This document shows positions 10,131 to 35,703 of a DNA stretch of 64,000 nt, piece by piece (within the stretch, counting starts at the first letter, position 1; every line of letters begins with the position of its first letter). The translations under genes and the position numbers were made by a program. The stretch lies in the IMG/VR virus record IMGVR_UViG_3300008954_003475, positions 1 through 64,000 of that record; one strand, 5' to 3'. The notes below the pieces were generated by a model, which worked only from the letters and a program-made list of their open reading frames with translations, was not told the origin of the DNA and did no database searches.

Positions 10131-10172
10131 AATAAAAAAAATCTTAGAGCCCCAACATGGAGGTCCTAAGAT
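10131..10172 (-). terminator. Putative intrinsic terminator after the sigma-factor gene
   Basis: Minus strand ATCTTAGGACCTCC-ATGTT-GGGGCTCTAAGAT imperfect hairpin followed by TTTTTTTATT. Confidence 0.6.
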
Positions 10173-10741
10173 AATATGGTTCTAAGCTTGTTTAGGCTGC
10201 AGTTTCTGATTTGTCTTATACGTTCTGTAGAAAGGTTAAATTTCGTTGCTATTTCATTTAGTCTTTTTCCGATAACTAAGTTGTCAATAACAATGTCTTT
10301 TTCTCTGTCGGATAAAATATTATTTTCATCAATAAACATCTTTTTAAATATTATTTTCATCTCTAACTCAACCTCTTTTTCGTTTAAAACATTACCAAAA
10401 TCACAGCTGCCTAATTCCTTTTTAATACCAGATTTTGCAATCGAAAATCGTTTAGAATTTGAATTGTAATCTCTAAGTTTTTTTGAAATATTCCATTGCG
10501 CCCATCTGAAGAAATCAAAGTTTTTTTGATAATCATATGTTAAGATTGCTTCCCACAATCCAATATAGGCTTCCTGAAATAGGTCTTCTTGAGAAGATAT
10601 ATTTTTATATTTTTTCGCTCTAGACTCTGCAAAGAATTTTGTCTGCACAAAAATATCGTGCATCCAATCCTTTGTATTCTTTTCTTCGTTTACGATATAT
10701 GTCATTTTTATATCAAGATTAGATAAATCGTAATAACTCAT
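10166..10741 (-). CDS. Sigma70-family RNA polymerase sigma factor (regions 2 and 4 only)
   Basis: Region 2 DLFQEAYIGLWEAILTYD...FFRWAQWNI; region 4 HTH LSDREKDIV...LNEIATKFNLSTERIRQI. Confidence 0.88.
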   Translation of the reverse strand: MSYYDLSNLDIKMTYIVNEEKNTKDWMHDIFVQTKFFAESRAKKYKNISSQEDLFQEAYIGLWEAILTYDYQKNFDFFRWAQWNISKKLRDYNSNSKRFSIAKSGIKKELGSCDFGNVLNEKEVELEMKIIFKKMFIDENNILSDREKDIVIDNLVIGKRLNEIATKFNLSTERIRQIRNCSLNKLRTILS

Positions 10742-10744
10742 TCT

Positions 10745-11326
10745 TTATTCATCCTCAGGGTTGTACTGATCCACAAACTCTCCGTCTTTCCAAGTCCTAA
10801 CTATAGAGGTTTCTTCTGACAAAGTAAAGACGGCAATAACATCATCTCTGGTCGAAAAAGATGCAGCACTTATGTGTCTAGTCCCACATCCCTCTGGAAC
10901 TTCTAATGCCGGATTGTCAACAAGCAGATATACTCTACCTCCTATAATTTGACCATTTCTATTGATAACAATAGCTCCATCGGCATCTTCTCTAAACAAA
11001 GCTTCTACGCTCTTCTTAGAAGAGGTTGTTGAAATATCTATATATTTTTGAATTGGATTAATCCCAATTTGTCGCATACCCGATACAAGATAATCTTTTG
11101 CTGTATCAAATACGCCAAACACAACCAGTATTCCTAACTTCTTTTGCCTATCTTTGTTTTCTTTAGATATTTCACACAATATATTGAATATCTTCTTTCC
11201 GACCTTCTGATGCTCTCTCGCAGCACTGAATTGGAAAGAAAAGTCAGTAGACGTAACCCTTTTGGGCGGCTCTACTGAAGTTGCCTGAATTTCTTCTTTC
11301 GACATGTACGACTCCATGGTTTCCAT
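10745..11326 (-). CDS. Stand-alone diadenylate cyclase (DisA_N/DAC) domain protein
   Basis: DAC motifs DADGAIVI (DGA) and GCGTRHISAA (RHR variant RHI); LSEET motif; no TM or DisA linker domain. Confidence 0.8.
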   Translation of the reverse strand: METMESYMSKEEIQATSVEPPKRVTSTDFSFQFSAAREHQKVGKKIFNILCEISKENKDRQKKLGILVVFGVFDTAKDYLVSGMRQIGINPIQKYIDISTTSSKKSVEALFREDADGAIVINRNGQIIGGRVYLLVDNPALEVPEGCGTRHISAASFSTRDDVIAVFTLSEETSIVRTWKDGEFVDQYNPEDE

Positions 11327-11335
11327 ATGAGGTAA

Positions 11336-11344
11336 ATTATACCA
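11336..11344 (-). promoter_or_regulatory. Extended -10 element TGGTATAAT upstream of the DAC gene
   Basis: TGn-TATAAT in an AT-rich intergenic gap, 9 nt before the ATG at 11326. Confidence 0.5.
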
Positions 11345-11398
11345 AGGATTTTAAATGTATAATTAAAAAAAATAAAAAAATTTAATTAAAAATAATTA

Positions 11399-12781
11399 TT
11401 AACTAAAGCCTAATTCATCATATGTGTAGTGAATAATGCGGGTCTCTGAATCGACCGTTTTTAAGTTTATTGGCCCACCCCAAACATCGTGGACATATCC
11501 CATAACCATTTCTAAATGTTTGACATCCAAAGTTCCAACATCTACACTGGCATGCTCCAACTGTAAAATTCCATCTTCAACGCCAACAATACAAATGAGA
11601 GGGGCTCTATAATTATAGAGATCTTTTATTATTGTTTCTTTGATAAAATCCAACTCTGTTCCAATTACCTCAATGGCGTCAATTCCATTTGCAGCCTTTA
11701 TTTGCTTAAAGGAAAAAAGCTTAAGATCTTTTGCCAAATCTTCTGTTAAATAATTTCTTATAAAAGAGATATCATCTTCATCTGCAACTATTTGATATAT
11801 TTTCTGAAAACCATTAATTTCAGATTCTCCATTTTTATGCTTTTCGTCCCATTCTTCTCGTATTTTTGTAAATATTGAAAAACCTAAAAAGTAAGGGTTT
11901 ATATTAAGATGATTCGATCCTGGTTGAACTACTTTTTCATGAATTTTACAAAAGTCAAGATATTCATGCTCTTCAACACAGCCTAGTTTTAACATAATCT
12001 CCGCATGAACAAAGCTTGCAAATCCTTCATTCATTATCTTGGTCATATATTGAGGATAAAAATAATAAGACTCTTGTCTTATTATCTCTAAAATATCTTT
12101 CTGCCAAGGCTCCAAGACTCTCGAATAATTAACCAAAAACCAAATAATATCAAACTCTTGAGACGGTGGAAAACCACTTTCTGCAGGAACCTCTTTGTAT
12201 GAAAAATCATGTGTTCCAAAAACATCATCAAATTCATCAAAACTTGTTTTTTTAAAATGTTTTTCGCCCTTTTTATACCTAGCTCTATTTGGCCCTTTAT
12301 GCCAATCTATATGTTTGTCTAAAGCAAATCCGATGTCCATAACTTTTTCAACTGTTTCAATTCCATACTTTTGTATATACTCCTCTATCCTCTGAGCCCT
12401 CTCGGCTGCATGATATACCATCTTGTTATCAGTTTGTTTGAATAAAAAATTATTTTTAAAAAAGTGAACATGACCAACGACATGCGCTGATACCATGGTG
12501 TTTGCTATGTCTGAATTTGTATCCAACAAGAATGCATAAGATGGGTCGTTATTAAGTACAACTTCATAAATCTTTGAAAAACCCATTTCTCCTTGCATTT
12601 TTTGATATTCATATGATTGCCCATAACTCCAGTGTCTAGCACGAGTAGGGAGGCCATAACTGATTACTTCTAACATTGTTTCTTGCGGAACAACCTCATA
12701 ATTTATTGGATAATAATCCAACTCCATATCATCTGCTATTTGTTCAATTTCTACAACTCTGTCTTTCAATAACTGATTCAC
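11399..12781 (-). CDS. spoVR: SpoVR/YcgB family protein
   Basis: LPTRARHWSYG, IYEVVLNNDPSYAFL, AHVVGHVHFFKNN, YFYPQYMTKIMNEGFASFVH. Confidence 0.92.
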   Translation of the reverse strand: MNQLLKDRVVEIEQIADDMELDYYPINYEVVPQETMLEVISYGLPTRARHWSYGQSYEYQKMQGEMGFSKIYEVVLNNDPSYAFLLDTNSDIANTMVSAHVVGHVHFFKNNFLFKQTDNKMVYHAAERAQRIEEYIQKYGIETVEKVMDIGFALDKHIDWHKGPNRARYKKGEKHFKKTSFDEFDDVFGTHDFSYKEVPAESGFPPSQEFDIIWFLVNYSRVLEPWQKDILEIIRQESYYFYPQYMTKIMNEGFASFVHAEIMLKLGCVEEHEYLDFCKIHEKVVQPGSNHLNINPYFLGFSIFTKIREEWDEKHKNGESEINGFQKIYQIVADEDDISFIRNYLTEDLAKDLKLFSFKQIKAANGIDAIEVIGTELDFIKETIIKDLYNYRAPLICIVGVEDGILQLEHASVDVGTLDVKHLEMVMGYVHDVWGGPINLKTVDSETRIIHYTYDELGFS

Positions 12782-12782
12782 A

Positions 12783-13976
12783 CTACACCTCTATCTGCTC
12801 TTTTGATCTGCTGTCAATATTGAAAAATGCCTTAAGAGCATCAAATACTTCTTCTCTAGACTTTATAACTATAGATACAAACCTAGTTCTCTTTATGTTT
12901 TTACTTAAAATTGACGAAAGCCTATTTTCTTCATTCATCCACGGGCTAAAATCTCCATTTGGAGCTATTTCCCCATACCCAATAGCTCTAACCATTGGCA
13001 ATAACTTTTTAACAAACTCTAAGGCACGCAAATTATCCTCCCCCCAATTGTCACCATCACTAAATTCAAAAACATAATTATTCCAAGATGATGGGGGATG
13101 ATTTGCCTGAATATGTTCATAAGCTAACTCAAATGCCGTACTGCAAAGAGTTCCTCCAGAATTTGATACTTTAAAAAACTCCTGCTCATTAACTATAAAC
13201 GCCCTTGCGTCGTGTGCAATAAATATTAACGAAATATTTTTATATCTTCTCTTAAGAAACTGAACCATCCAAAAGTAAAAACTCTTTGCAATATAAGTCT
13301 TCTCTTGACTCATGGATCCGCTGCGATCCATCATCAAGTAAACTGCCGCATTTGAATGATATTCTTTATTTGTTTCCCAATTTCTATATCTTAAATCATT
13401 TTCGTTAATTCCGCCAATCTTTGCATTGCCTTTTGCTGCATTTCTTTTTAAATTTTCAAAAAGAGTTTTCTTGATATCTATATTTGGAAATATACCCTTT
13501 TTCTCTATAGAGGATAAATCTTCAGTTTCCACTTCTATAGCCGAACTTTTATCTGGCTCCATCCAAGGGAGGTTTAGCTCTTCCAGCAAAATATCAACTA
13601 TCTCATCGATAGTAACTTCTGCATCGAAAACTGCCTCACCCTCTTTGTCTCCAGGCTTATCTCCTTCGGGCTTCTTCTCGCCTCTTTTTCTAAGTCGAAA
13701 CTTATCCCCAGGCTTGACATCAATCCCTTGACCAGTTTTGTCTTTATTTTTTAGCTTTCCATATTTAAACTTATATCTGTCTAAAAAACGTATAGGTATT
13801 TTAATCTTTTTATCACCATCTGATGTGATGATATTATATTCCGTTATAAGGTCTTTGCCATTTTTTCTTATGGCATCATTTATAAGCTTCTTATGCCTAT
13901 CGGAATCTCGCTTGCCCCTTTGCTTGAGCTTCCAGATATCCGATAAGCTTTTTTGCGCTTTCGGTGTATTGGACAT
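12783..13976 (-). CDS. yeaH: YeaH/YhbH (UPF0229/DUF444) VWA-like protein
   Basis: KRDSDRH N-terminus, DLRYR, MMDRSGSM (MIDAS DxSxS), SGGTLCSTA, FSDGDNW. Confidence 0.9.
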   Translation of the reverse strand: MSNTPKAQKSLSDIWKLKQRGKRDSDRHKKLINDAIRKNGKDLITEYNIITSDGDKKIKIPIRFLDRYKFKYGKLKNKDKTGQGIDVKPGDKFRLRKRGEKKPEGDKPGDKEGEAVFDAEVTIDEIVDILLEELNLPWMEPDKSSAIEVETEDLSSIEKKGIFPNIDIKKTLFENLKRNAAKGNAKIGGINENDLRYRNWETNKEYHSNAAVYLMMDRSGSMSQEKTYIAKSFYFWMVQFLKRRYKNISLIFIAHDARAFIVNEQEFFKVSNSGGTLCSTAFELAYEHIQANHPPSSWNNYVFEFSDGDNWGEDNLRALEFVKKLLPMVRAIGYGEIAPNGDFSPWMNEENRLSSILSKNIKRTRFVSIVIKSREEVFDALKAFFNIDSRSKEQIEV

Positions 13977-13977
13977 C

Positions 13978-15897
13978 TCAGCCTCTTGCCATTAACGAGC
14001 TTACATACCTTAATAATTTGTTTGCACTTGTTGCTGTATAATTATACTTTTCGCACAAAGTATTAATTACAACATTTATTCTCTTAAGCTCTTCCTCGTC
14101 TGGATTTCTTGCGCTTACAGTTAAACGGATAACGTCTTGTCTTTCATCGAAGAGTTGTCTCTCAAGCGCTTCACGTAACTTTGGATGATTTTTATAGTTA
14201 TAAGCTCCATCGCCAGATTTTGCAGATCTTAACATCTTTCTGTATATCTCTTGTCTAAAAGATTTCTTGCCGGACTCCGTAATTCCAACCTTCTCCTCAA
14301 TGGATCTCATCAGTCTTTCGTTTGGCTCAACATAATCTCCCCACTCATCTTCAATCGTTGTTCCATCAAGAGATGCGCCAACATGGTCCATATAATTATT
14401 AAGAAGACTTTGAACCTCTTCTTCAAAATTAACGAAGAATGCTTTTTGAACTTCATTTCTTGCAATTTTGCTATACTCCTCTATAACTGAGGTTAATATA
14501 TTTTCAAGCTTCTCTATGGCTTTGGGGTCTAATTTTGGATTACTTGCAAATCCGTCTCTAATAGATCTTATTATATCAACTGGAGTAATGCAGTTTGCGC
14601 CATCTTCGGCCAAAGTTGATGAAATCCTATTTATAATATATCTTGGAGATATTCCCGTCATGCCTTCTGAATCAAATTCTTTTCTAAGAAGGGGAACGTC
14701 TGATTGTGAAAAACCCTCAACCTCTTCTTCGTTGTATAAGCGCATTTTGCTCATTACGGATAAGCCTTCATGCTTTGAATCTTTAAGCCTAGAAAGTACA
14801 GCAAACATAGCTGCGCAATAAAGAGTATATGGCGCTATATGCACACCCTCAAAGGTTGCTTGGCCTATTAACTTTTCATATATCTTAACTTCTTCATTTA
14901 CACTTAAATTATATGGAATCTTTATGACAATAATTCTATCGTGCAAAGCTTCCATCTCGTCTTTGGCTAAAAATCTTTTATATTCTGTTTCATTTGTATG
15001 TGCTAGTAAAAATTCATCTGCATAAATGAAGGGATAGCGTCCTGTTTTTATATTCTTTTCTTGAGCCAGTGTTAGTAAGACATATAAGAATTTTTGATCA
15101 ACCTTTAACATCTCAACAAATTCCATAAGCCCTCTGTTGGCTATGTTCAACTCTCCATCAAACCTATACGCCCTCGGGTCTGACTCTGAACCAAATTCTC
15201 CAATTTTACTCAAGTCCATTGACCCGACAAGCTCTGAAATGTCTTGGCTTTTCTTATCCGATGGAACGAAGGTGCCTATCCCAACTCTTGACTGTTCAGA
15301 AAAACACACCCTGCTTACAGGTAGCTCTAAAAAGTCTCCATCATGATTCTCTTTCAGCATCAACTCCATATAGGGGCTTAATTGGCCATCTATTTTGATC
15401 CCATAATCACTCAAAAACTGACCTCTCAATTTATGCGGAATCGCACAAAGAGGGTCTTCAAACATTGGAGAATCTTTTAGACAATATACTGTTCCATCGT
15501 CTGTTCTGGTAAACTCTTCAAGCCCTCTCTTTAGCAATACGGCCAATTGAGATTTTCCAGATGATGTAGGTCCATACAAAAGAAGTATTCTTCTAGAAAC
15601 TTCGCTCCCTGCTGCAGCGGCTCGTAAGTATGACATTATTTCGCCAATTGATTCATTAATTCCAAATAAATCATTTGCAAAGAAAGAATATTCTTCAATA
15701 TCTCCATCCTCACCCCTTACAATTCCAGCACTCTCAATCATCCTTAAGGTTCTTGAGTGCGCATTCATATGAATCTCTGGCTTCTTAATAACAAGATTAA
15801 TATAATCTCGAAGAGTGCCCTCCCACTTCAAAGACGTTGTCTCCTCTATGTGTTCATCTAAGGACTTAAAGAGTTTTGTAGTATTCTTTTTTGGCAT
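13978..15897 (-). CDS. prkA: PrkA/YeaG family AAA+ ATPase/kinase
   Basis: Walker A YGPTSSGKS, DISELVGS, DPRAYRFDGELNIANRGLMEFVEMLK, GISPRY. Confidence 0.93.
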   Translation of the reverse strand: MPKKNTTKLFKSLDEHIEETTSLKWEGTLRDYINLVIKKPEIHMNAHSRTLRMIESAGIVRGEDGDIEEYSFFANDLFGINESIGEIMSYLRAAAAGSEVSRRILLLYGPTSSGKSQLAVLLKRGLEEFTRTDDGTVYCLKDSPMFEDPLCAIPHKLRGQFLSDYGIKIDGQLSPYMELMLKENHDGDFLELPVSRVCFSEQSRVGIGTFVPSDKKSQDISELVGSMDLSKIGEFGSESDPRAYRFDGELNIANRGLMEFVEMLKVDQKFLYVLLTLAQEKNIKTGRYPFIYADEFLLAHTNETEYKRFLAKDEMEALHDRIIVIKIPYNLSVNEEVKIYEKLIGQATFEGVHIAPYTLYCAAMFAVLSRLKDSKHEGLSVMSKMRLYNEEEVEGFSQSDVPLLRKEFDSEGMTGISPRYIINRISSTLAEDGANCITPVDIIRSIRDGFASNPKLDPKAIEKLENILTSVIEEYSKIARNEVQKAFFVNFEEEVQSLLNNYMDHVGASLDGTTIEDEWGDYVEPNERLMRSIEEKVGITESGKKSFRQEIYRKMLRSAKSGDGAYNYKNHPKLREALERQLFDERQDVIRLTVSARNPDEEELKRINVVINTLCEKYNYTATSANKLLRYVSSLMARG

Positions 15898-16187
15898 TAT
15901 AAGGTTTCTCCATATACATCTAATATAGCTTTTGTATCACCTAACTTTATTTTATTAACAATCTTTCTAGCTTCTTCTTTGGCATCAGCCAATATTTCTT
16001 CTTTACCCTTTGATATCTTACTAGATGAAGAATTAAATATTCTAATAAATTTAGATACAGTATCACATTTTTTACATTTTTGATCATATAACACATCTTT
16101 ATTCTCTAAAGATAAATAATCTGATATAGACATAGTTATAGACTCCTCCGTATCACACTTTCCACATTTAAAATTATACTTAGCCAT
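15897..16187 (-). CDS. FmdB-like zinc-ribbon protein
   Basis: YNFKCGKC...CKKC paired CxxC; 1-nt overlap with the prkA start. Confidence 0.65.
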   Translation of the reverse strand: MAKYNFKCGKCDTEESITMSISDYLSLENKDVLYDQKCKKCDTVSKFIRIFNSSSSKISKGKEEILADAKEEARKIVNKIKLGDTKAILDVYGETL

Positions 16188-18090: not shown

Positions 18091-18733
18091 TTACGAACAA
18101 CTCCACATGATGACTTCTCAAAGATTTGAATGATTTAGCAAAAAACCCTCCAAATATTTGGTCTACATCTTCATCATTAGAACAAAGAATGGTTGGAAGT
18201 TGGTTTTGAAATCTTGTACGCAAAACATATTCTAAAGAAGAGCCAAAAATCTGCTCAGCTTTATCGGATGGAAAAATCCAATGTGAACTAAATTCATCAA
18301 TTACTAAAAAATCTTTATTTAATAATTCACTATAATACTTAGCAGTATCTAGCTCTTTAGATAGCATATTGGCAACCACATCGGCCATTGTGGTGTAAAG
18401 CCCAGAGTAACCAGATGCAACAGCTCTTTTTAACACACAACATGCCGTATAGGTCTTTCCCGTTCCAAGGCCGCCTGTGAACATAAATGATTTTCCACTA
18501 TCATATAAATTATTTATGTTTTCTATTTTTGTTTTTACAAACTTCTTAAAGTTCGGATCACCTGCAAAGTCTTTGAAGGACAATTCCCAATATTCCACAG
18601 GAATATTTGACAAAGCATATCTGTCAAGCCTGGATGCTTTGGACGAGCATGTGCCACAGCCCATACCGTCACAAGCCTTGCAAGACTCTTTTACCTTCTG
18701 CTTTACTCTGTCAATCTTAGTCTTTGGTATCAT
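18056..18733 (-). CDS. DnaC/IstB-like helicase loader ATPase
   Basis: Zn-finger CKACDGMGCGTC, Walker A GGLGTGKT, Walker B LVIDE, RFQNQLPTILCSN; adjacent to DnaB. Confidence 0.85.
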   Translation of the reverse strand: MIPKTKIDRVKQKVKESCKACDGMGCGTCSSKASRLDRYALSNIPVEYWELSFKDFAGDPNFKKFVKTKIENINNLYDSGKSFMFTGGLGTGKTYTACCVLKRAVASGYSGLYTTMADVVANMLSKELDTAKYYSELLNKDFLVIDEFSSHWIFPSDKAEQIFGSSLEYVLRTRFQNQLPTILCSNDEDVDQIFGGFFAKSFKSLRSHHVELFVIGGKDFRRKNA

Positions 18734-19187
18734 CTTCGCTTACTTTGAAATTTATACTTGTTTTATTTAAAGGCTCAATATCAGCCCCTGATTCATCAGA
18801 TGAGGGTAAGGCATTTCCACCTGCAAAAAATACAGACAAATCATTATCTTCCTCTTCTGGTATATTGCTTAATAACGCCCCCGGTATAGACATACTGGAC
18901 TCATCATAAGATATGCTATTCATGGGGAAAGTGTCAGAAACAGAGTTGCCTCGCCTGCTTTCACCTGCCCTTTCAGAAGAGGAAGAGGCCGCCGCAAGCG
19001 GCATAGTCCTAGCGCTTTCTGACAGCAACAAACAAGCGACCTTTTCCTTAAATACCATAAACAGATTTCCATCCTGCTCAACAGTAAACCTATTATCCTC
19101 AAAAGATTTTACTTCGCCCGTTATTTGCCACCCACCATCTAAAAATAATGTAACAGTTTTTCCGACCAAACTTTCTTTACTATTCAT
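18717..19187 (-). CDS. Hfq/Sm-like fold protein with acidic disordered tail
   Basis: VTLFLDGGWQITGEVKSFED...MVFKEKV aligns by eye to the Hfq Sm1/Sm2 motifs (VSIYLVNGIKLQGQIESFD...MVYKHAI). Confidence 0.6.
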   Translation of the reverse strand: MNSKESLVGKTVTLFLDGGWQITGEVKSFEDNRFTVEQDGNLFMVFKEKVACLLLSESARTMPLAAASSSSERAGESRRGNSVSDTFPMNSISYDESSMSIPGALLSNIPEEEDNDLSVFFAGGNALPSSDESGADIEPLNKTSINFKVSEDDTKD

Positions 19188-19783: not shown

Positions 19784-19851
19784 GATAAATCGCCTCCATG
19801 TAAATGGTACCTCTGCTATACAAACTTAACTATTCAAATAAAAATATTATA

Positions 19852-21384
19852 TCAAGCCCAATCAATAGGCTTTCTTTTTGGATACGAATGCAAAACTTTA
19901 TTCTTTGGCATCTTTATGTTAAACCCCGGCTCGCTCCTATAAACCTTAATTCGAGCCTCAGAATGATCTCTTAAATATTTACAATTATCAAAAAACTCAA
20001 CAACTATTGCTTTCTTTTTTCCAGGAGCCTTTCTTATAACTCGACCGATTCTTTGCAACGCTCTTCCGCTTGATTTGCCAGAACCGGCCAAAATTAAGGC
20101 ATCAAGCTCTGGTATATCAATTCCTTGATCAAATATCTTTGAAGCAATCAAAACTTGAATTTTACCATCCCGCACTTCCTGTATTCCTTCAAGCCTATTT
20201 TTTGAGCTTTTTGCTCCATCCAAAAATTTAACAGAATATTCATCCCCTATCATTTTCTGCAAATCCTTTCCATGCTGCACTCTTACTACTAAGATTAATA
20301 CCTTCTTTCCAGCATCTACCAGTTTTTTAGTGGCCTTTAAAATTAAATTATTTCTATCTTCATTCTCAACTATATAATTCTTATAAACTTCGTGATAATT
20401 TTTTCCAACGTTCCTCATCACAGGAACGTTTATAAAATGAATATCAGGAGGCACCAAGTAATCCAAAGATATTAACTTTGTTGCATTAACATCGCAAAAT
20501 TTTGGACCAGAAACGGCCTCTATCAGAATATCATCACCCGTATCCCTCCATGGCGTTCCAGAAAGCAAAAACCTATGTCTCGCAGATACACTTGCCCGGT
20601 GAATAAACTGAAGAGTTTCAGATGCAGCATACTGACATTCATCAAAAATGAATAATTGAGCATTTTGAACCTTTTCTCTCACAATTCTTTTATTTAATAT
20701 CTTTATTTGTGAAGAAGAATCTTGGGTTGTATCGTTATCTGCAATTTTCGCCTTTTTATTAAAAGCTGCTGCAGCAGACCAAATCGTCATAATAGTTACA
20801 GGCTTCGATATATCACACTCTCCCCCACCTACTATGCCGCACTCTATTCCATATGCCTCTTCTAATGTTTTCTTCATTTGATGAAGTAATTCAATTCCAA
20901 TAACATATATTACAGTTGGAATATTATACTTTGCAGCAATAGATGCTATTATTAGGCTTTTTCCGCCGCCTGTAGCAACCTTTATTATTCCGCTACCAGC
21001 TTCTCTGGCAGATTTGACGACACTCTTTTGATAAGGTCGTAACTTAAACTCTTTATTCTTAAGAGGAAGCTCTTTGCCATACTCAATAGATGGCCGAGCA
21101 TCTATAACTTCATATGCAATATTGTTGACTTTAAGCAAATCTTCAGCAATACTTAACAAGCCAATTGGAAAACGCATGGTCTTAGATAGCAACCTGATCT
21201 TGCCGTCCCAACCTCCGTATTTTCCATGAAGACCATAGCCGCCCTTTCCTCCCTTCATAAACATATATCCGGGATGATCATAGCTCATAAGCTTATCAAG
21301 TTTTGATAAAACCTTAGGATCTAATGGTCCATCTATTTTACAATTTACATTATCTATAATAATTCTAATCATAATTTCCCGCAA
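19852..21384 (-). CDS. Superfamily 2 DNA helicase (UvsW/XPB-like)
   Basis: LRPYQ, ATGGGKS, DECQ, SGTP, GIDIP, QRIGRVIR; probable start ATG 21372. Confidence 0.9.
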   Translation of the reverse strand: MREIMIRIIIDNVNCKIDGPLDPKVLSKLDKLMSYDHPGYMFMKGGKGGYGLHGKYGGWDGKIRLLSKTMRFPIGLLSIAEDLLKVNNIAYEVIDARPSIEYGKELPLKNKEFKLRPYQKSVVKSAREAGSGIIKVATGGGKSLIIASIAAKYNIPTVIYVIGIELLHQMKKTLEEAYGIECGIVGGGECDISKPVTIMTIWSAAAAFNKKAKIADNDTTQDSSSQIKILNKRIVREKVQNAQLFIFDECQYAASETLQFIHRASVSARHRFLLSGTPWRDTGDDILIEAVSGPKFCDVNATKLISLDYLVPPDIHFINVPVMRNVGKNYHEVYKNYIVENEDRNNLILKATKKLVDAGKKVLILVVRVQHGKDLQKMIGDEYSVKFLDGAKSSKNRLEGIQEVRDGKIQVLIASKIFDQGIDIPELDALILAGSGKSSGRALQRIGRVIRKAPGKKKAIVVEFFDNCKYLRDHSEARIKVYRSEPGFNIKMPKNKVLHSYPKRKPIDWA

Positions 21385-21458: not shown

Positions 21459-22397
21459 TTACTTATCGCTACAGAATAAACTTTGACTGACTTCGCCAAG
21501 AAGCCCTGGCATGTCCATCCCTGCACAATCTATCTTTGTTCTTACAAAGTTATAATGATTAGAGAAGCCTTCAAAACTGCCATCTTCGCAGCCGCTATGC
21601 ACAGTGGTGCATAATGTGCCATCAGAATTTTGCGGATATTCTAATGGAATTCCAAGCCCTAAATGAACAGCTTTCCACAAAGCTTTTAGGGCTTCAATTT
21701 GGACAGGATAAAACCACATAAAAGGTTTTTGTGTTTTTCCATGCACCTGTCCATTCTCTTGCAATGGTCTTTCACCAAACCCATTTTCAACGTACCAGTC
21801 CTGGTACTTTGGATAATAAGCATTGCTTATCTCTATGCCAATACTTTTTTTATTTCCATGGTATTTGCTGCAATGCCACGCCCCATGTTGCGTATCTAAT
21901 AGTTGATATATTGTTCCATCATTGTCTAAACAAAAATGGACTGATATTCCCCTTCTATTCAATATATTTGCACATGTTTCTGCAGACAAACATACATCCC
22001 AATGATTAACAAACATAGAAGGCTCTCTATCTGGCTTTCCGGAGTTATCATAATACTTTCCAGGGGTTATAGCCAAACCATCCGGCTCGTCCCATAAAAC
22101 CACCTGGGGCCAATCAATTGGCAAAAACTTACCATTATGGACAATAAAATTACTTTCATTATTTAATGTAGATCTTTTCTTTGGTTTATAATTTGATATC
22201 TCGACTTGCCTTTCGGTCCATATCCTCCTATAGGTCATTGGACCGACAAGCCCATCTGCCGTTACCTTGTGGGCTCTTTGCCACTTTTTAACTTTGTTTA
22301 CCAAATCTTCATCAAAATGTTCAGCGCCAAACCAACTAGGGCTCCACCCCAACTTTAATGAGCTAGATTCATTATAGAAGTCTTTGTCCACAGCCAC
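21459..22397 (-). CDS. N-acetylmuramoyl-L-alanine amidase (Amidase_2) with N-terminal peptidoglycan-binding domain (endolysin-like)
   Basis: PG-binding VKKWQRAHKVTADGLVGPMT; amidase motifs VNHWD, VHFCLDNDGTIYQ, AWH, SIGIEI, NHYNF...KIDC; SD AGGAGG before GTG. Confidence 0.85.
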   Translation of the reverse strand: MAVDKDFYNESSSLKLGWSPSWFGAEHFDEDLVNKVKKWQRAHKVTADGLVGPMTYRRIWTERQVEISNYKPKKRSTLNNESNFIVHNGKFLPIDWPQVVLWDEPDGLAITPGKYYDNSGKPDREPSMFVNHWDVCLSAETCANILNRRGISVHFCLDNDGTIYQLLDTQHGAWHCSKYHGNKKSIGIEISNAYYPKYQDWYVENGFGERPLQENGQVHGKTQKPFMWFYPVQIEALKALWKAVHLGLGIPLEYPQNSDGTLCTTVHSGCEDGSFEGFSNHYNFVRTKIDCAGMDMPGLLGEVSQSLFCSDK

Positions 22398-24871
22398 TAC
22401 TTCCTCCTTCTCCTATCTATTATAGAAGCCCTACCACTTTTTGACCCCTTTTGAAGTCTATTAAAGCCAGACTTTTTCTTTCTGATCTTTCTATTAACTT
22501 CTTCAGAAACGGCATTAACCTTATCCTCTCCCAAGTCTAAAGTCATAGCAACATCTCTATTCTTTTCTTTTTGAGAAGCTATTACCGCTTGTTGCTGACT
22601 TTCCTTCTTTAAATTATCAATCCTATCCCTAGGAAGCCCAAGGCCGGCGAACCAACTATATATCTTAATTGAATCCGAATCAGAATCTACATTGTAAACG
22701 CCCTGATAAATAGGAGCTCCGTTTGTTTGCTCTGAAATCATATGAAAACAATAATTTATGTTTATAGCAGGCAGCTTCTCCAGCACTTCTTTGGATCCGG
22801 CAACTATAACTCCGCCAGCTCTTGTTTGCGTTAAGTCAAAACCAGAAGCAAGCATGTTGGAGTTTAGGCTGTCAATCACAGCCTCTGCTAGTGCCGTTTC
22901 TTCCATATAATCTTCAACCTCCATAACCCCATATATAGAACAATCTCCACAAGAAATAATCTTACCAAAGTCGCTTGGGTCTAAAGCTGTAAACCTGGAG
23001 GGCTTAGCCGTAAGGGTGTTGAAAATATGAAGAGGCTCTACAATTGCATTATTTGCAGCCTCCCAAAACTTAGATTGACTAAGGTTTGCATAAATCTGCT
23101 CAATTCTTGCATTATCAACAACAATTAAATTTGAAACAATATTATCTGCGGTAAGCCTTGCCAGCCTAGAGAGAGTCTCTATAGAATTCTTCTTAGATTG
23201 AGCATCCTCTGTAGCTTTCGGCAAAACATATATAACCCCGACCGGAGTGCCCGTTTCAAATAACATTGGAATCAATGTATCAACAGAGCTTGATCCAGTA
23301 CCTCCGCCACCAGAGACGGCCAAATATACCATATGATTTCCTTCAATTACTCGATCAAACAAGGGCTGCATCAAATCAACACTTTCTGCAAAAATTTCAC
23401 GACCTAAGTCCAAGTCCTTACCAGTGCCTCCAAGGCTTCCTTCTAACAAAAGCTTTTGGCTGCCTGGAACATCAATAAATTCAAGATCTTGAGCCGAAGT
23501 GTTAACCACAGCTACATCATATCCTTTTTGGTGAAATACCTCTGCCAGCCTAGACCCTGCTTGTCCAACGCCTATAATGGCCAGCTCTATACTGACACCT
23601 CTTGTGTTTACAACCACAGGCATATCTTCCTCCTTCTTCTTTTGCATTTTTTCACGCAACCTTTCAAGAACATCTTCTTCCTGTCCATCATCTTTGGCCT
23701 CAAGAAGGGGTTCTGTTAAATCCTCCAAAACTTGGTCCGCTTCACCCGCTCCAAAAGCAGCCATCAGCGCCTCATTGTCTTGGTCAATATTTTTTTGAGA
23801 TTTTTCTTTTCGTTTAATCTCAATTTCTTTTACTTCATTTTTACTCATTATAAAATCCTCATAATATCTATTAAGTTGCTCTAATATCTTTTTTCTATTT
23901 GTAGTCGCAAACGGAACATGTGTTTCATTTTTATTATACGAAATTACTTCACAAAGGTATTCGGAATGTTTATTCATAGGGTCTGCATCAACTGTGATTA
24001 TGTCACAGTTCATAGCTTTTGCCTCATAAAAGCTTAACCCAAGCCCCTCCCTGGTAGAGGGGGCGATAACACAGTGTGATTTATCATATAATTTTACTAT
24101 ATCCTCTCTCTTCAAAACATCATTTATTAGTATTATATTCTTACACTTTTTTGCTATATTAGACTCGTCCTCAGTTAATCTCCCGCTAACCAACAATGTG
24201 GCATCTGATTTGGACATTCTGGAAAAATCTGAAAACGCTTCTAACGTTTGAATTGTATTTTTCTGATTAAAACCTGAATTTACAGGCCCAGGATGATAAA
24301 ATGATAATTTTTCTAGATCACCCTTATTTGCCTTAGGGACAAATAAAGCTCTGTCTACATAATCCCAAGATACTTGTTTTTTATTTTTATATTTTCTAAA
24401 TATATTATAAGAAGTTTCCGTAAGACACCAAACTTGATCAAAAATACTATATGAATTACTTTGAACAAACCTTTTATTTATCCACTCAGGCATTGGTACG
24501 TCAATAATCTTTATTCCAGTTTTTGCCTTAATATTCGAAACCCACTGCCCCTTCATCATAAAAGTTTCAAAAGAAATAATTATATCAATATCATTATCCC
24601 TCACAAGCCTTAAAAGCTGCTTCTCTACAGTTTTTTCCTTTGATAGAACATGAAAAGAAACATCAGATAATAAACTTTCATCATATGGTTCAGGATAATG
24701 ACGCCTAAATGTGCCGCCAAGGGCCTCTTTCTTATATTTTGCTTTTGAAACATAAGAAACTTCATTATTCTCACTAAGAATATCCCCAAGAGACTTTGCC
24801 AAATACCAGAGTCCAGATTCAGAAAGATATGTTTTTATCAAAATCTTTTTATTCTTTATTTTATTTATCAT
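22397..24871 (-). CDS. Fusion protein: N-terminal GT-B (GT4-like) glycosyltransferase + C-terminal tubulin/FtsZ-family GTPase
   Basis: aa 1-340 PSTREGLGLSFYEA (E-x7-E); from ~aa 430 IIGVGQAGSRLA, VNTSAQDL, GGTGKD, SGGGGTGSS (tubulin signature), VVDN, T7-like LDPSDF; basic C-terminal tail. Single uninterrupted frame. Confidence 0.88.
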   Translation of the reverse strand: MINKIKNKKILIKTYLSESGLWYLAKSLGDILSENNEVSYVSKAKYKKEALGGTFRRHYPEPYDESLLSDVSFHVLSKEKTVEKQLLRLVRDNDIDIIISFETFMMKGQWVSNIKAKTGIKIIDVPMPEWINKRFVQSNSYSIFDQVWCLTETSYNIFRKYKNKKQVSWDYVDRALFVPKANKGDLEKLSFYHPGPVNSGFNQKNTIQTLEAFSDFSRMSKSDATLLVSGRLTEDESNIAKKCKNIILINDVLKREDIVKLYDKSHCVIAPSTREGLGLSFYEAKAMNCDIITVDADPMNKHSEYLCEVISYNKNETHVPFATTNRKKILEQLNRYYEDFIMSKNEVKEIEIKRKEKSQKNIDQDNEALMAAFGAGEADQVLEDLTEPLLEAKDDGQEEDVLERLREKMQKKKEEDMPVVVNTRGVSIELAIIGVGQAGSRLAEVFHQKGYDVAVVNTSAQDLEFIDVPGSQKLLLEGSLGGTGKDLDLGREIFAESVDLMQPLFDRVIEGNHMVYLAVSGGGGTGSSSVDTLIPMLFETGTPVGVIYVLPKATEDAQSKKNSIETLSRLARLTADNIVSNLIVVDNARIEQIYANLSQSKFWEAANNAIVEPLHIFNTLTAKPSRFTALDPSDFGKIISCGDCSIYGVMEVEDYMEETALAEAVIDSLNSNMLASGFDLTQTRAGGVIVAGSKEVLEKLPAININYCFHMISEQTNGAPIYQGVYNVDSDSDSIKIYSWFAGLGLPRDRIDNLKKESQQQAVIASQKEKNRDVAMTLDLGEDKVNAVSEEVNRKIRKKKSGFNRLQKGSKSGRASIIDRRRRK

Positions 24872-25577
24872 ATACTAGTTTGCCACCAAGCCTTTCTTTT
24901 GAGGCCTTTTTTATATCTTCTATATTTTGTTCGAGCTCCTTCTTTCGATCCTTCTGCTGAGTCAAAGAGCCTCCTCTTGGAATTACAGAATAATAATACA
25001 AAATTTGATGAATATATTCTATAGGATATTGCTCAGAAATCCTCAGCCACATGTCGTAGTCTTCTGCAATCCAAAGATCTTCATTAAAAAGACCAACGTC
25101 ATTTAAAACAGCTCTCTTAATTGTGGTAGATCCTGATGCTACAAAATTTTGAGTCATAAGAGCAGAATGGTCTATCCTTATAGGTCTTTTATAAAAAGGC
25201 TTTTTAAGACGAACTCTATTTAATAAAATTTGATAATTTCCACAAGTCATGCCTATATCTGGCCTTTCTTTAAACGCATCTATAGATAATTTTAACTTGT
25301 GCCTATTCATTATATCATCTGCATCCAAAAGACTGACAAGATCTCCGCTTGTTGCTCTAATGCCAACATTTCTTGACGCTCCAGGCCCAATGTTCTTTTC
25401 ATTTCTTATATATTTAACAGTAGGAAATCTCCTCAATAACTTTTTAACATCCTCTGTTGAATTATCATCAACAACTGTAACTGTATACTTTTTATATTCC
25501 TGAGAAAAGCAGCTTCTAATTGCTTGCGTAAGAAATTTTCCAGGATTATAGGCTGGAATGATAATGTCAACCAACAT
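24861..25577 (-). CDS. GT2 family glycosyltransferase
   Basis: IIIPAYN, VDDNST, GPGASRNVG, LDADD (DxD), EDYDMW. Confidence 0.9.
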   Translation of the reverse strand: MLVDIIIPAYNPGKFLTQAIRSCFSQEYKKYTVTVVDDNSTEDVKKLLRRFPTVKYIRNEKNIGPGASRNVGIRATSGDLVSLLDADDIMNRHKLKLSIDAFKERPDIGMTCGNYQILLNRVRLKKPFYKRPIRIDHSALMTQNFVASGSTTIKRAVLNDVGLFNEDLWIAEDYDMWLRISEQYPIEYIHQILYYYSVIPRGGSLTQQKDRKKELEQNIEDIKKASKERLGGKLVYDK

Positions 25578-26523: not shown

Positions 26524-26578
26524 AAGCTTCCTTGTGACATTTTACTGCCAAAATTGCTTAAAATTTTATATTTTTTGA

Positions 26579-28063: not shown

Positions 28064-28101
28064 GACTATAATTACTCATATTGGACAAAATTAATAATAG
28101 A

Positions 28102-28476
28102 TCAGCGCCCATAGTCATCCTCTATCCTTATAACATCATCCAGCTGCTTTGTGCTTACCTCAAACAACTCAACATCTTCATCTTTTGCTATAAACCTATG
28201 AGTATAAAATGGTGGAATATGAAATGTCATTCCTTCCTTTAATATAATCGTTCGCCTAGAACCATCAAACCCCTCTGCGGCATGTCCTCCTGTTTCTAGG
28301 TATAGAATTCCAGATTTAACAAAAATAGTCTCCTCTTTTTCTTCATGATATTGAAAAGACAACCTGTGGCCTGCTTTGATAAACAATATTTTGCCCACAT
28401 AGCCATTTTCGCAAGAAGACTTTGCCCAAATTATCTCATGGCCCCAAGGCTTTTCTATTTTTTTACAATATTCCAT
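28102..28476 (-). CDS. Cupin protein (mannose-6-phosphate isomerase type II C-terminal-like)
   Basis: KPWGHE, RLSFQYHEEKEET, HIPPFYTHRF, EVST. Confidence 0.8.
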   Translation of the reverse strand: MEYCKKIEKPWGHEIIWAKSSCENGYVGKILFIKAGHRLSFQYHEEKEETIFVKSGILYLETGGHAAEGFDGSRRTIILKEGMTFHIPPFYTHRFIAKDEDVELFEVSTKQLDDVIRIEDDYGR

Positions 28477-28483
28477 TATATGT

Positions 28484-31143: not shown

Positions 31144-31152
31144 TTTGCATAA

Positions 31153-33502: not shown

Positions 33503-33518
33503 AACCTTCTAAGCATCC

Positions 33519-35644: not shown

Positions 35645-35703
35645 ATTTTAATATTTTTTATTGCTCTTATTCTAAATTATATTTATTAAATAATATAAAG
35701 AAC

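What the first reader, a model, noticed from the sequence alone, without database searches (positions are those of the whole stretch)
11399..15897. Complete PrkA/YeaG-YeaH-SpoVR triad carried by a phage
Seen: three intact, contiguous genes with 1-nt gaps (AAA+ ATPase, VWA/MIDAS protein, HxxxH-containing SpoVR), between phage replication and nucleotide genes. Known: these families are stationary-phase/nitrogen-starvation genes in E. coli and sporulation genes in Bacillus, with unresolved mechanism. The AAA+/VWA pairing resembles MoxR-type chaperone systems. Inference: the phage manipulates host dormancy or persistence, or repurposes the triad as an assembly chaperone or protease.
Basis: partly seen in the sequence, partly recalled or inferred. 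Interest (0 to 1): 0.7.

Follow-up and report, generated by a model that had tools for sequence, protein, structure and literature searches.

The report
PrkA-YeaH-SpoVR operon in marine jumbo phage
A widespread family of very large ocean phages carries, as a strictly conserved core part of its replication gene block, an intact copy of the bacterial PrkA/YeaG-YeaH-SpoVR three-gene set, whose biochemical job is still unknown and which here looks like a three-part ATP-driven protein-processing machine rather than a sporulation device.

Summary
Three intact minus-strand genes, 13978-15897, 12783-13976 and 11399-12781, separated by single bases, encode PrkA (AAA+), YeaH/DUF444 (vWA-MIDAS) and SpoVR. 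The contig is a real phage, a 222-kb fragment of a roughly 330-kb marine jumbo phage.

The triad is not a recent host pick-up. At least 20 related viral contigs keep it in the same place: DnaC-DnaB-Zn ribbon-PrkA-YeaH-SpoVR-diadenylate cyclase-sigma. PrkA is more conserved than the replicative helicase. dN/dS is 0.04-0.08. The nearest cellular copies are only about 50/40/36% identical. The phage clade is separate from all named bacteria.

Phage triads are already in databases (Thermus phiYS40, Ralstonia RsoM2USA, PHROGs) but have never been studied.

New leads:
- SpoVR's predicted fold matches zincin metallopeptidase domains (Z 12). It has HxxGH plus NEGxAS motifs but no catalytic Glu.
- Inteins in relatives sit exactly in these motifs and in the PrkA sensor-1 region.
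- A complex model supports YeaH binding SpoVR (0.72, best control 0.00).

Best reading: a split AAA+/adaptor/zincin-like machine that the phage uses during the replication phase. Its substrate and its benefit to the phage are unknown. The sporulation or dormancy reading is untested and looks like a naming artefact.

The parts
15897..16187 (-). Small Zn-ribbon protein (96 aa, CxxC...CxxC, weak FmdB-type match). Its stop overlaps the PrkA start (TAATG). It may be a fourth component or a regulator.
   Evidence: ORF. Pfam Zn_ribbon_8 at 3.5e-4 and TIGR02605 at 3e-4, both below cut-off. Junction read. Kept directly upstream of PrkA in nearly all related contigs at 30-48% identity.
13978..15897 (-). 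PrkA/YeaG-family AAA+ ATPase (639 aa). Walker A is GPTSSGKS at 109-116. The aromatic-Gly pair F235-G236 lies in the segment that aligns with the pore-loop Y-G pair described for B. anthracis PrkA. The HTN sensor-1 region is near residue 300.
   Evidence: PF08298 at 2.4e-112 and PF06798 at 9.9e-70. phrog_22605 at 7e-141. PDB 9xip 'Serine protein kinase' at 1.4e-126. Motifs. Identity to relatives is 66-97%. dN/dS 0.038.
12783..13976 (-). YeaH/YhbH (DUF444) protein (397 aa). The N-terminal region is predicted to clamp SpoVR. The C-terminal vWA domain has a complete MIDAS motif (D217, S219, S221, T276, D307/D309).
   Evidence: PF04285 at 4.5e-87. TIGR02877 at 8e-114, below cut-off. VWA_2 at 0.006. 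Invariant columns. Interface residues 10-31 and 66-95.
11399..12781 (-). SpoVR/YcgB-family protein (460 aa, GTG start). The N-terminal ~355 residues are predicted to have a zincin-like fold with H100xxGH104 and N251-E252-G-F-A-S256. There is a small C-terminal alpha/beta domain.
   Evidence: PF04293 at 1.6e-108. AlphaFold2 model with pLDDT 79, pTM 0.75. VIA-align top hits are M1, thermolysin, M3 and M32 peptidases, Z up to 12.2. Invariant residues. Intein sites in relatives.
11327..11398 (-). AT-rich 72-nt spacer after SpoVR. It carries an extended -10 element (TGGTATAAT, 11336-11344) in front of the next gene. This is the likely end of the triad's transcription unit.
   Evidence: Sequence. 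TGNTATAAT is found 15 times against 6 expected, 13 of them on the minus strand.
10745..11326 (-). Minimal diadenylate cyclase (DAC domain, 193 aa) with DGA and GTRH motifs. It is conserved immediately downstream of the triad in the lineage.
   Evidence: PF02457 at 1.1e-13. NCBIfam DacZ at 6.6e-16. Motifs. Synteny. No PHROG family.
10166..10741 (-). Small sigma-70-family (ECF-sized) sigma factor. It follows the DAC gene in several relatives.
   Evidence: Sigma70_r2 and r4. TIGR02937 at 2e-14. phrog_351. Synteny.

Best explanation
The three genes are a functional, vertically inherited core module of a cosmopolitan lineage of marine jumbo phages (genomes about 320-400 kb).

They are translated as a coupled unit: Zn ribbon, PrkA, YeaH, SpoVR. 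They are probably transcribed together with the replication genes (DnaC, DnaB).

The products most likely form one machine:
- PrkA is a hexameric AAA+ motor. The literature places it in clade III, the clade of FtsH/YME1, and it has no protease site of its own.
- YeaH is the adaptor. Its N-terminal arm grips SpoVR. Its vWA-MIDAS domain is left free to bind the motor or a substrate.
- SpoVR is a zincin-like, probably metal-binding effector.

In effect this would be an FtsH-like ATP-driven protein-processing device split into three polypeptides. It follows the same logic as MoxR-vWA-effector systems.

In the phage it would act in the cytoplasm during the replication phase on host or phage proteins, for example to reshape the proteome of a nutrient-starved host.

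What is shown:
- Presence, intactness and strong purifying selection.
- Lineage-wide synteny.
- Distance from cellular copies.
- Fold similarity.

What rests on prediction or on published work:
- The YeaH-SpoVR contact (a model only).
- That the three proteins act together (published cofitness in six bacteria).

What is inferred:
- Assembly with PrkA.
- Proteolytic or remodelling chemistry.
- The substrate and the benefit to the phage.
For: Family assignments and motifs are.

Phage context:
- The phage identity of the contig is supported.
- 16 viral contigs, then 5 more, carry the same gene order UvsW-...-DnaC-DnaB-...-Znr-PrkA-YeaH-SpoVR-DAC-(sigma).
- PrkA is 66-77% identical where DnaB is 48-72%, and 56-60% where DnaB is 32-37%.
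- dN/dS is 0.038 for PrkA, 0.078 for YeaH and 0.063 for SpoVR, against 0.049 for DnaB.

Origin:
- The best cellular homologues are 48-52% (PrkA), 36-42% (YeaH) and 31-39% (SpoVR) identical, in Chloroflexota and Acidobacteriota, with the same gene order.
- The phage clade is monophyletic (support 100). Its sisters are metagenomic sequences, and one of them lies on a phage-like 117-kb contig.

Assembly:
- Independent metagenome assemblies bridge the gene junctions with no mismatches.
- Translational coupling is seen at the junctions.

Structure:
- The SpoVR model matches zincin catalytic domains: LTA4H Z 12.2, thermolysin Z 8.7, and nearly all of the top 50.
- H100, G103, H104, E252, G253, A255 and S256 are invariant from Thermus phages to bacteria.
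- Inteins in relatives interrupt exactly HxxGH (two sites), NEGxA|S and the PrkA AH|TN sensor-1 region.
- The YeaH-SpoVR complex model scores 0.72 against a best control of 0.00. That mark was reached by 58 of 80 solved complexes and by 2 of 110 mismatched pairs. The runs agree at 80% or more, and the partner's pLDDT is 81 or more.

Literature:
- yeaG, yeaH and ycgB are each other's best cofitness partners in six bacteria (10.1101/072470).
- B. anthracis PrkA is a clade III AAA+ protein like YME1 but lacks protease residues and activity (PMC13001217).
- B. subtilis PrkA showed ATP-dependent casein hydrolysis (PMC9512850).
Against: - SpoVR lacks the catalytic Glu of HExxH (HVVGH, across the family), so peptidase chemistry is not assured.
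- Foldseek found no significant PDB match. Z of about 12 for a largely helical model is within the range the tool warns can be a common arrangement.
- Metal binding and the proximity of H100, H104 and E252 in the model were not checked.
- No PrkA-YeaH or PrkA-SpoVR contact was modelled because of the size limit.
- The complex score is a model's own confidence. It used my own alignments, so the tool's calibration counts hold only roughly.
- Expression evidence is one 216-nt metatranscriptome contig, which could be DNA carry-over.
- The host is unknown, so the starvation rationale is conjecture.
- In Thermus phages the genes are in another order and lie next to packaging or head genes, which fits a different role.
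Confidence: 0.45

Rival explanations
1. Host-dormancy manipulation. The phage expresses the triad to push the host into, or hold it out of, a stationary-phase, persister or sporulation-like state. It would use the same signalling role the triad has in bacteria.
For: - Cellular homologues are tied to nitrogen starvation, amino-acid use, osmotic stress and sporulation.
- The neighbours are a c-di-AMP synthase and a sigma factor, both plausible host-reprogramming genes, and both are conserved beside the triad.
- YeaH scores best against the Firmicute YhbH model.
Against: - Sporulation-specific meaning is unlikely. The triad is found in non-sporulating Chloroflexota, Acidobacteriota, E. coli and Thermus, and in phages of Thermus and Ralstonia.
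- The phage clade is old and far from any host copy. That is atypical for a host-mimicking accessory gene.
- The mutant phenotypes of the cellular genes are not conserved between species, so there is no defined 'dormancy' output to hijack.
- No host is known.
Confidence: 0.2
2. Virion or replication-factory assembly chaperone. The AAA+/vWA pair acts like MoxR-vWA systems and inserts a cofactor into, matures or remodels a phage structure such as the prohead, portal or a large complex. SpoVR would be the maturation factor or protease.
For: - In Thermus phage Lalka8 the three genes lie between the portal and minor head genes and TerL. In phiYS40 they lie a few genes from the large terminase.
- AAA+ plus a vWA-MIDAS partner is the MoxR-type layout (established knowledge).
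- Jumbo phages build very large particles.
Against: - In the marine lineage the triad sits in the replication and nucleotide-metabolism block, far from the baseplate and tail genes.
- The same operon exists in many bacteria that have no phage particle to build.
- PrkA has no sequence match to MoxR AAA families.
Confidence: 0.15
3. Ser/Thr kinase signalling pathway. PrkA phosphorylates host or phage proteins, and YeaH and SpoVR are regulators.
For: - The historic annotation and in-vitro casein phosphorylation by YeaG are cited.
- The PDB entry is named 'Serine protein kinase'.
Against: - Two recent studies found no kinase activity for Bacillus PrkA.
- The conserved features here are AAA+ motifs.
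- The inteins target the AAA+ sensor-1 region.
Confidence: 0.08
4. Artefact. The stretch is cellular DNA joined to a phage contig by misassembly, or a bacterial contig wrongly called viral.
For: - One near-identical fragment is deposited in a 'Pacearchaeota' MAG.
- The triad is typical of cellular genomes.
Against: - That MAG contig carries the same phage genes (DnaC, DnaB and others) at 86-90% identity and is itself a phage fragment.
- More than 20 viral contigs share the synteny.
- GC content and skew are uniform across the region.
- Contigs from other runs bridge the junctions.
Confidence: 0.02

Closest known systems
Bacterial prkA-yhbH-spoVR / yeaG-yeaH-ycgB gene set (PF08298+PF06798, PF04285, PF04293)
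   Same: - Same three families, same gene order and same lengths.
- Same motifs: Walker A, MIDAS and HxxGH/NEGxAS.
- Cellular operons in Chloroflexota and Acidobacteriota are collinear with it.
   Different: - Carried by a phage and embedded in its replication gene block.
- Only about 50/40/36% identical to the nearest cellular copies.
- Forms its own clade.
- All three proteins score below the NCBIfam equivalog cut-offs.
- Preceded by a coupled Zn-ribbon gene and followed by a DAC gene. Neither was found beside the cellular operons examined.
Triads of cultured phages: Thermus phiYS40/TMA/phiLo/Lalka/MN1, Ralstonia RsoM2USA and huge uncultured phages (LR756511)
   Same: All three families are present and adjacent. 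They have been annotated in passing as SpoVR and serine kinase (PMC8504454).
   Different: - Only 29-36% identity to the window's PrkA.
- Separate clades in the tree, so at least four independent acquisitions.
- Thermus phages have the order vWA-SpoVR-PrkA, with a shorter vWA protein, near packaging genes.
- RsoM2USA has the proteobacterial YeaG type.
FtsH/YME1 (AAA+ clade III motor fused to an M41 zincin protease)
   Same: - A classic-clade AAA+ motor with an aromatic pore-loop residue (literature).
- A zincin-like domain is present in the system.
   Different: - The motor and the zincin-like protein are separate polypeptides, with a vWA protein between them.
- No membrane anchor.
- SpoVR has HVVGH rather than HExxH.
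- No M41 sequence match.
MoxR-vWA chaperone pairs (RavA-ViaA, CbbQ-CbbO, NorQ-NorD) and MoxR-vWA ternary systems
   Same: An AAA+ ATPase is encoded next to a vWA-MIDAS protein, with a third effector-like gene. The adaptor logic is the same.
   Different: - PrkA gives no hit to the MoxR AAA families AAA_3 or AAA_5.
- It is placed in clade III, not the MoxR clade.
- It has a large C-terminal PrkA domain.

Membership tests
PrkA/YeaG family | N-terminal AAA_PrkA domain with Walker A, plus the C-terminal PrkA domain, over Pfam cut-offs | tested here: met
   376 and 236 bits against a cut-off of 25. GPTSSGKS at 109-116. Aligns end to end with PDB 9xip.
PrkA/YeaG family | Equivalog of E. coli YeaG (NCBIfam NF011999 cut-off) | tested here: not met
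   294 bits against a cut-off of 576. In the tree it lies far from the E. coli YeaG clade.
YeaH/YhbH (DUF444) | DUF444 over the Pfam cut-off and a vWA domain with a complete MIDAS motif (DxSxS...T...D) | tested here: met
   293 bits against a cut-off of 27. D217, S219, S221, T276 and D307/D309 are invariant in 18 sequences.
YeaH/YhbH (DUF444) | Equivalog of the sporulation protein YhbH (TIGR02877 cut-off) | tested here: not met
   380.6 bits against a cut-off of 467.95.
SpoVR/YcgB | SpoVR domain over the Pfam cut-off, with the conserved HxxGH and NEGxAS motifs | tested here: met
   363.5 bits against a cut-off of 27. Invariant columns. The NCBIfam equivalog NF008737 is not reached (225.7 against 679).
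prkA-yeaH-spoVR operon | The three genes adjacent and co-oriented in the order PrkA, YeaH, SpoVR | tested here: met
   The same order is seen in about 75 cellular loci.
Recently host-derived auxiliary gene (AMG/moron) | Close similarity to a cellular (host) copy and patchy presence among related phages | tested here: not met
   The best cellular identity is 52%. The triad is present in every related contig that covers the region. It forms a separate clade.
MoxR AAA+ family | AAA+ domain of the MoxR type (Pfam AAA_3 or AAA_5) | tested here: not met
   No such Pfam hit at E <= 0.001. The literature places PrkA in clade III. Structural clade features were not examined here.
Lon protease | C-terminal S16 Ser-Lys protease domain | tested here: not met
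   Only the PrkA domains were found by Pfam.
Zincin (gluzincin) metallopeptidases | Zincin fold | tested here: inconclusive
   With VIA-align the top 50 hits are almost all zincin catalytic domains, Z up to 12.2 over about 177 residues. Foldseek found nothing at E < 0.001, and the tool warns about helical models.
Zincin (gluzincin) metallopeptidases | HExxH with a catalytic Glu, plus a downstream Glu as third metal ligand | tested here: not met
   The motif is H-V-V-G-H (no Glu), in phages and bacteria alike. A candidate third ligand, E252 in NEGFAS, is invariant.
Known anti-phage defence systems | Match to a PADLOC model | tested here: not met
   No hit for PrkA, YeaH, SpoVR, the Zn-ribbon protein or the DAC protein.

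The most novel reading that the evidence does not exclude
The PrkA-YeaH-SpoVR triad is a previously unrecognised three-part ATP-dependent metallo-enzyme: an AAA+ motor, a vWA adaptor and a zincin-like effector, in effect an FtsH split into three polypeptides. Several unrelated phage lineages have captured it independently. In marine jumbo phages it has become as indispensable as the replicative helicase. Together with the adjacent phage c-di-AMP synthase and sigma factor it would form a host-takeover module. The compact, highly conserved phage versions, and the culturable Thermus and Ralstonia phages, would then give a direct route to the biochemical function of a gene set that has been unresolved since the 1990s.
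Probability: 0.25. Interest if true: 0.8.

Novelty: new member of a known kind. Interest (0 to 1): 0.55.

Why it matters
The yeaG-yeaH-ycgB / prkA-yhbH-spoVR set is one of the most widely conserved bacterial gene sets that still has no agreed biochemical function. It has been called a kinase, a protease and neither.

Here a cosmopolitan phage lineage keeps all three genes under selection as strong as that on its helicase. That argues the set is a self-contained machine useful outside any sporulation or host-specific regulatory circuit.

The analysis also points to concrete things to test:
- candidate active-site residues, namely the intein-marked motifs, the HxxGH/NEGxAS site and the zincin-like fold;
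- a candidate contact, the YeaH N-terminus on SpoVR.

For phage biology the region adds a conserved block (triad, c-di-AMP synthase, sigma factor) to the list of jumbo-phage functions that have not been studied.

Tried and rejected
- Nucleotide search of the phage collection found nothing. Relatives are only visible at protein level.
The single-protein scan worked, but it is biased to genomes that share one of six 8-residue peptides, so '52% best cellular identity' is a lower-sensitivity statement. The exhaustive search of representatives agrees with it: the best full-length hits outside the clade are 42-44% identical.
- Consensus promoter and terminator scans were uninformative: 45 promoter-like sites against 36 expected, and no minus-strand terminator.
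- Searches of the genome for Pfam Gp23 and Terminase_6C found nothing. The record is incomplete.
It rests on synteny.
- The 'moraphage' paper (PMC12619734) does not describe this lineage or these genes.
- No paper in the library links SpoVR to zincins, or marine jumbo phages to PrkA. No paper was found for PDB 9xip.
- Host prediction was not achieved. The genome fragment has one tRNA. The DAC protein is closest to archaeal DacZ models, while the sigma factor, DnaB and DnaC point to a bacterial host.

Full report
**1. Observation**

The window holds three contiguous minus-strand ORFs at exactly the stated coordinates.
- 13978-15897: 639 aa.
- 12783-13976: 397 aa.
- 11399-12781: 460 aa, with a GTG start.

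Pfam assigns each to its family far above the cut-off.
- PrkA AAA domain (2.4e-112) and PrkA C-terminal domain (9.9e-70).
- DUF444 (4.5e-87).
- SpoVR (1.6e-108), plus a weak SpoVR_C match.

NCBIfam finds the same families, but all three proteins score below the equivalog cut-offs.

The junctions are TGAgATG and TAGtGTG, each with a GAGG-type ribosome-binding sequence upstream. A 96-aa Zn-ribbon gene ends inside the PrkA start codon (TAATG).

The functional motifs are intact.
- Walker A GPTSSGKS.
- MIDAS D217-S219-S221, T276 and D307/D309.
- SpoVR H100-V-V-G-H104.

The flanks need one correction. The immediate downstream genes, however, are a diadenylate cyclase (DAC domain, 1.1e-13) and a small sigma factor.

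**2. Is it a phage, and is the join real?**

The window is the first 64 kb of an IMG/VR virus record of 221,878 bp, which CheckV estimates to be 66% complete.

The window also encodes typical phage proteins.
- A baseplate wedge protein (phrog_6, 8e-44) and tail fibre proteins.
- A UvsW-type helicase, DnaB, DnaC and PhoH.

Nearly all genes are on one strand. GC content and skew are even across the triad.

The same DNA occurs in many marine metagenome runs from several studies. Short contigs from three of those runs match without mismatch and bridge three junctions: SpoVR/YeaH, YeaH/PrkA and PrkA/Zn-ribbon. It is covered by synteny instead.

A misassembly or a cellular contaminant is therefore very unlikely.

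**3. Relatives**

A protein search found more than 120 clusters at 67-97% identity. Many lie on contigs of 200-400 kb, including Tara Oceans data.

Sixteen IMG/VR contigs, and five more found with a profile, carry the triad. A tblastn map shows one conserved layout: UvsW, ORF199, Hfq-like, DnaC, DnaB, small ORFs, Zn ribbon, PrkA, YeaH, SpoVR, DAC, often sigma, then RNR and PhoH.

PrkA is the best conserved protein of the block.
- It is 66-77% identical where DnaB is 48-72%.
- In the most distant members it is 56-60% identical where DnaB is 32-37%.

Against the closest relative, dN/dS is 0.038 (PrkA), 0.078 (YeaH) and 0.063 (SpoVR). DnaB gives 0.049 and DnaC 0.059. Synonymous sites are close to saturation, so these values are rough.

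The triad is thus a core, vertically inherited part of this lineage, not a sporadic accessory gene.

**4. Relation to cellular copies**

I scanned one genome for each of about 185,000 prokaryotic species.
- One 89% match turned up, on an 8.2-kb contig of a 'Pacearchaeota' MAG.
- That contig has the same phage genes in the same order at 86-90% identity. It is a mis-binned phage fragment.
- All other matches were at 52% or below, in Chloroflexota (Ktedonobacteria, Thermomicrobia) and Acidobacteriota (Pyrinomonadaceae).
- Those genomes have the same order PrkA-YeaH-SpoVR, at about 50/40/36% identity.

The exhaustive search of 1.8 billion representative proteins agrees. The nearest full-length proteins outside the clade are 42-44% identical and mostly unnamed.

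In a tree of 80 PrkA sequences:
- The marine jumbo clade is monophyletic (support 100).
- Its sisters are a marine-sediment sequence and a sequence from a 117-kb phage-like contig. On that contig the triad sits among clamp-loader, sliding-clamp, DHFR, dNMP-kinase and sigma-like genes.
- Named bacteria form other clades. Two nearby representatives were checked and are in ordinary bacterial contexts.

**5. Other phages**

tblastn found PrkA in 17 phage records, all at 37% identity or less.
- Thermus phages: phiYS40, TMA, phiLo, the Lalka phages and MN1.
- Three or four uncultured phages of about 600 kb.
- Ralstonia RsoM2USA.
- A 30-kb Enterobacter record with YeaG at its very end.

The partners are adjacent where I looked.
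- Thermus phages have a shorter vWA protein, then SpoVR, then PrkA. In Lalka8 this lies between the portal and minor head genes and TerL. In phiYS40 it is near the terminase. In MN1 it is near the dCTP deaminase.
- RsoM2USA and LR756511 have PrkA-YeaH-SpoVR.

In the tree these phages fall in at least three further places.
- The Thermus phages lie next to Alicyclobacillus.
- RsoM2USA and LR756502 lie with E. coli YeaG.
- LR756511 lies elsewhere.

Phages have therefore acquired the set at least four times.

All three proteins already have PHROG families. The RsoM2USA paper lists the genes without comment on the set. I found no paper that studies a phage triad.

**6. What the proteins look like**

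*PrkA.*
- It aligns over its full length with a solved structure, PDB 9xip/9xiq/9xir, 'Serine protein kinase' (1.4e-126). I found no paper for that entry.
- For B. subtilis PrkA the literature reports ATP-dependent casein hydrolysis and no kinase activity (PMC9512850).
- For B. anthracis PrkA it reports an AAA+ clade III architecture like YME1, but no protease residues and negligible protease or kinase activity (PMC13001217).
- The window's protein keeps an aromatic-Gly pair (F235-G236) in the segment that aligns with the pore-loop Y-G pair described in that paper.

*SpoVR.*
- It has no sequence match in the PDB.
- An AlphaFold2 model built from 18 phage and bacterial sequences has pLDDT 79 and pTM 0.75.
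- Foldseek gave no significant PDB hit. Its weak hits were ACE2, anthrax lethal factor and DPP III, which are all zincins.
- The Foldseek-independent search gave almost only zincin catalytic domains in the top 50, covering model residues 1-355. Examples are leukotriene A4 hydrolase (Z 12.2), M1 aminopeptidases (Z 10-12), DUF885, thermolysin (Z 8.7), the M3, M32 and ACE families, BepA and YbeY.
- The residues invariant from Thermus phages to bacteria fit a gluzincin-like site. They include H100, G103, H104 and E252-G253-x-A255-S256. The HxxGH lies on a helix, and NEGxAS resembles thermolysin's NExxSD.
- The catalytic Glu of HExxH is absent across the whole family.
- I treat 'zincin-like fold, probably metal-binding' as a supported lead. 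I treat 'peptidase' as an inference.

**7. Inteins as natural markers**

In related contigs the genes are interrupted by in-frame inteins with no stop codons.
- PrkA is split between H300 and T301 (LLAH | intein | TNETEY, the sensor-1 region).
- SpoVR is split after H104 and, in another phage, after H100. Both sites are inside HxxGH.
- In two further phages SpoVR is split between A255 and S256 of NEGxAS.

Many of the nearest PrkA representatives are 1000-1570 aa long with two or three matched stretches, which points to the same thing. One relative has two inteins in PrkA. Some Ktedonobacteria SpoVR proteins are about 890 aa.

It is established knowledge that inteins settle in the most conserved functional sites of proteins their carrier cannot lose. 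Here they mark the two SpoVR motifs and the AAA+ sensor as such sites.

**8. Do the proteins work together?**

Published fitness data show that yeaG, yeaH and ycgB are each other's best cofitness partners in six bacteria (10.1101/072470). The phenotypes differ between species and often concern amino-acid use.

I modelled the phage YeaH with SpoVR.
- The score was 0.72 in three runs, against 0.00 for the best of three controls.
- That mark was reached by 58 of 80 solved complexes and by 2 of 110 mismatched pairs.
- The runs agree in at least 80% of their contacts, and the partner's pLDDT is at least 81.
- My own alignments were used, so the tool's calibration counts hold only roughly.
- The interface uses the N-terminal part of YeaH: residues 10-31, which hold the invariant D24, R27 and H28, and residues 66-95.
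- On SpoVR it uses residues 27-58, which hold the invariant H50 and W51 and were a low-confidence loop in the monomer model, together with the C-terminal domain (353-396 and 414-429).
- The vWA-MIDAS domain of YeaH is left free.

This supports binding but does not show it. A PrkA-containing complex exceeded the tool's size limit.

**9. Transcription**

From about 19850 to 11400 the genes overlap or nearly abut.

The extended -10 sequence TGNTATAAT is enriched: 15 copies against 6 expected, and 13 of them are on the coding strand.
- One lies just upstream of ORF199 (19846-19854).
- One lies in the 72-nt AT-rich spacer after SpoVR, in front of the DAC gene (11336-11344).

The likely unit is therefore ORF199-Hfq-like-DnaC-DnaB-...-Zn ribbon-PrkA-YeaH-SpoVR, with DAC-sigma as the next unit. 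This is an inference.

The only RNA evidence is one 216-nt contig inside PrkA in a marine metatranscriptome. That is a hint, not proof.

**10. Interpretation**

The best-supported reading is that the triad is one machine.
- PrkA is the AAA+ motor.
- YeaH is the adaptor.
- SpoVR is a zincin-like effector.

The logic is that of FtsH/YME1 split into separate chains, or of MoxR-vWA-effector systems. The phage makes it together with its replication proteins.

This reading fits the conflicting literature on PrkA, an AAA+ protein that looks like a protease motor without a protease site.

What the machine acts on, and why a jumbo phage needs it as much as its helicase, is unknown. A role in reshaping the proteome or nitrogen economy of a starved marine host is plausible but conjectural.

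The alternatives stand as follows.
It rests on names. The set is common in non-sporulating bacteria, and its phenotypes are not conserved between species.
- An assembly-chaperone role is suggested by the Thermus phage contexts but not by this lineage.
- The triad is not a known defence system.

**11. Novelty and verdict**

The gene set is known. Phage copies have been in databases since the phiYS40 record. This is therefore a new member of a known kind, not a new kind.

What is new and worth following up:
- The set's status as a core, highly constrained module of a cosmopolitan marine jumbo-phage lineage.
- Its repeated capture by unrelated phages.
- The intein-marked sites and the zincin-like fold of SpoVR.
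- The predicted YeaH-SpoVR contact.
- The conserved link to a phage c-di-AMP synthase and a sigma factor.

Interest is moderate, at 0.55.

Noticed in passing
L017:6039-9065 (PrkA), L017:10258-12741, L010:11904-14474, L005:12893-15499, L008:12675-15287 (SpoVR), L129:4186-8388 (PrkA): In-frame inteins of about 370-410 aa, some with LAGLIDADG-like segments, interrupt PrkA and SpoVR of related phages at four different sites. Many of the nearest PrkA representatives are 1000-1570 aa. Some Ktedonobacteria SpoVR proteins are about 890 aa, so cellular SpoVR carries inteins too.
   Followed up: partly
window 10745-11326 (-): The phage encodes a minimal diadenylate cyclase (DAC domain with DGA and GTRH motifs, 193 aa). 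Its best NCBIfam match is the archaeal DacZ (6.6e-16). It has no PHROG family. It is conserved directly downstream of the triad across the lineage. A phage making c-di-AMP would be of interest in its own right.
   Followed up: partly
window 10166-10741 (-): A small ECF-sized sigma-70-family sigma factor follows the DAC gene. A sigma-like gene also lies near the triad on the unrelated phage-like contig L106.
   Followed up: no
window 18717-19187 (-): A 156-aa protein has a weak N-terminal Hfq/Sm-like match (Pfam 5.8e-5, below cut-off) and a long Ser/Asp/Glu-rich tail. It lies between ORF199 and DnaC and is conserved in relatives at 31-41% identity.
   Followed up: no
L020 (NZCX01000035.1, 8231 bp): A contig deposited in a 'Candidatus Pacearchaeota' MAG is a fragment of this phage lineage (DnaC, DnaB, triad and DAC at 86-90% identity). 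It is a binning error in a public genome.
   Followed up: yes
window 22397-42057 (-): A long run of genes includes several glycosyltransferase-like proteins. One is an 824-aa protein with a weak PhuZ/tubulin PHROG match (5.8e-6, residues 429-577).
   Followed up: no
window 46676-56635 (-) and 42017-46618 (-): Giant ORFs of 3319 aa and 1533 aa lie next to the baseplate gene. The 1533-aa ORF has no PHROG match, and the 3319-aa ORF was not searched. They are presumably tail or fibre-related.
   Followed up: no
window, whole; e.g. 11336-11344, 19846-19854, 14570-14578: The extended -10 motif TGNTATAAT is enriched: 15 copies against 6 expected, and no shuffle reached 15. Thirteen of the 15 are on the coding (minus) strand. 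This suggests host sigma-70-type promoters that lack -35 boxes.
   Followed up: partly
L008:16292-17914 and L011:14433-17300: The ribonucleotide reductase gene of relatives is also split into separated matching pieces. This may be another intein or an inserted element.
   Followed up: no
The SpoVR/DAC junction therefore could not be checked with reads.
   Followed up: no
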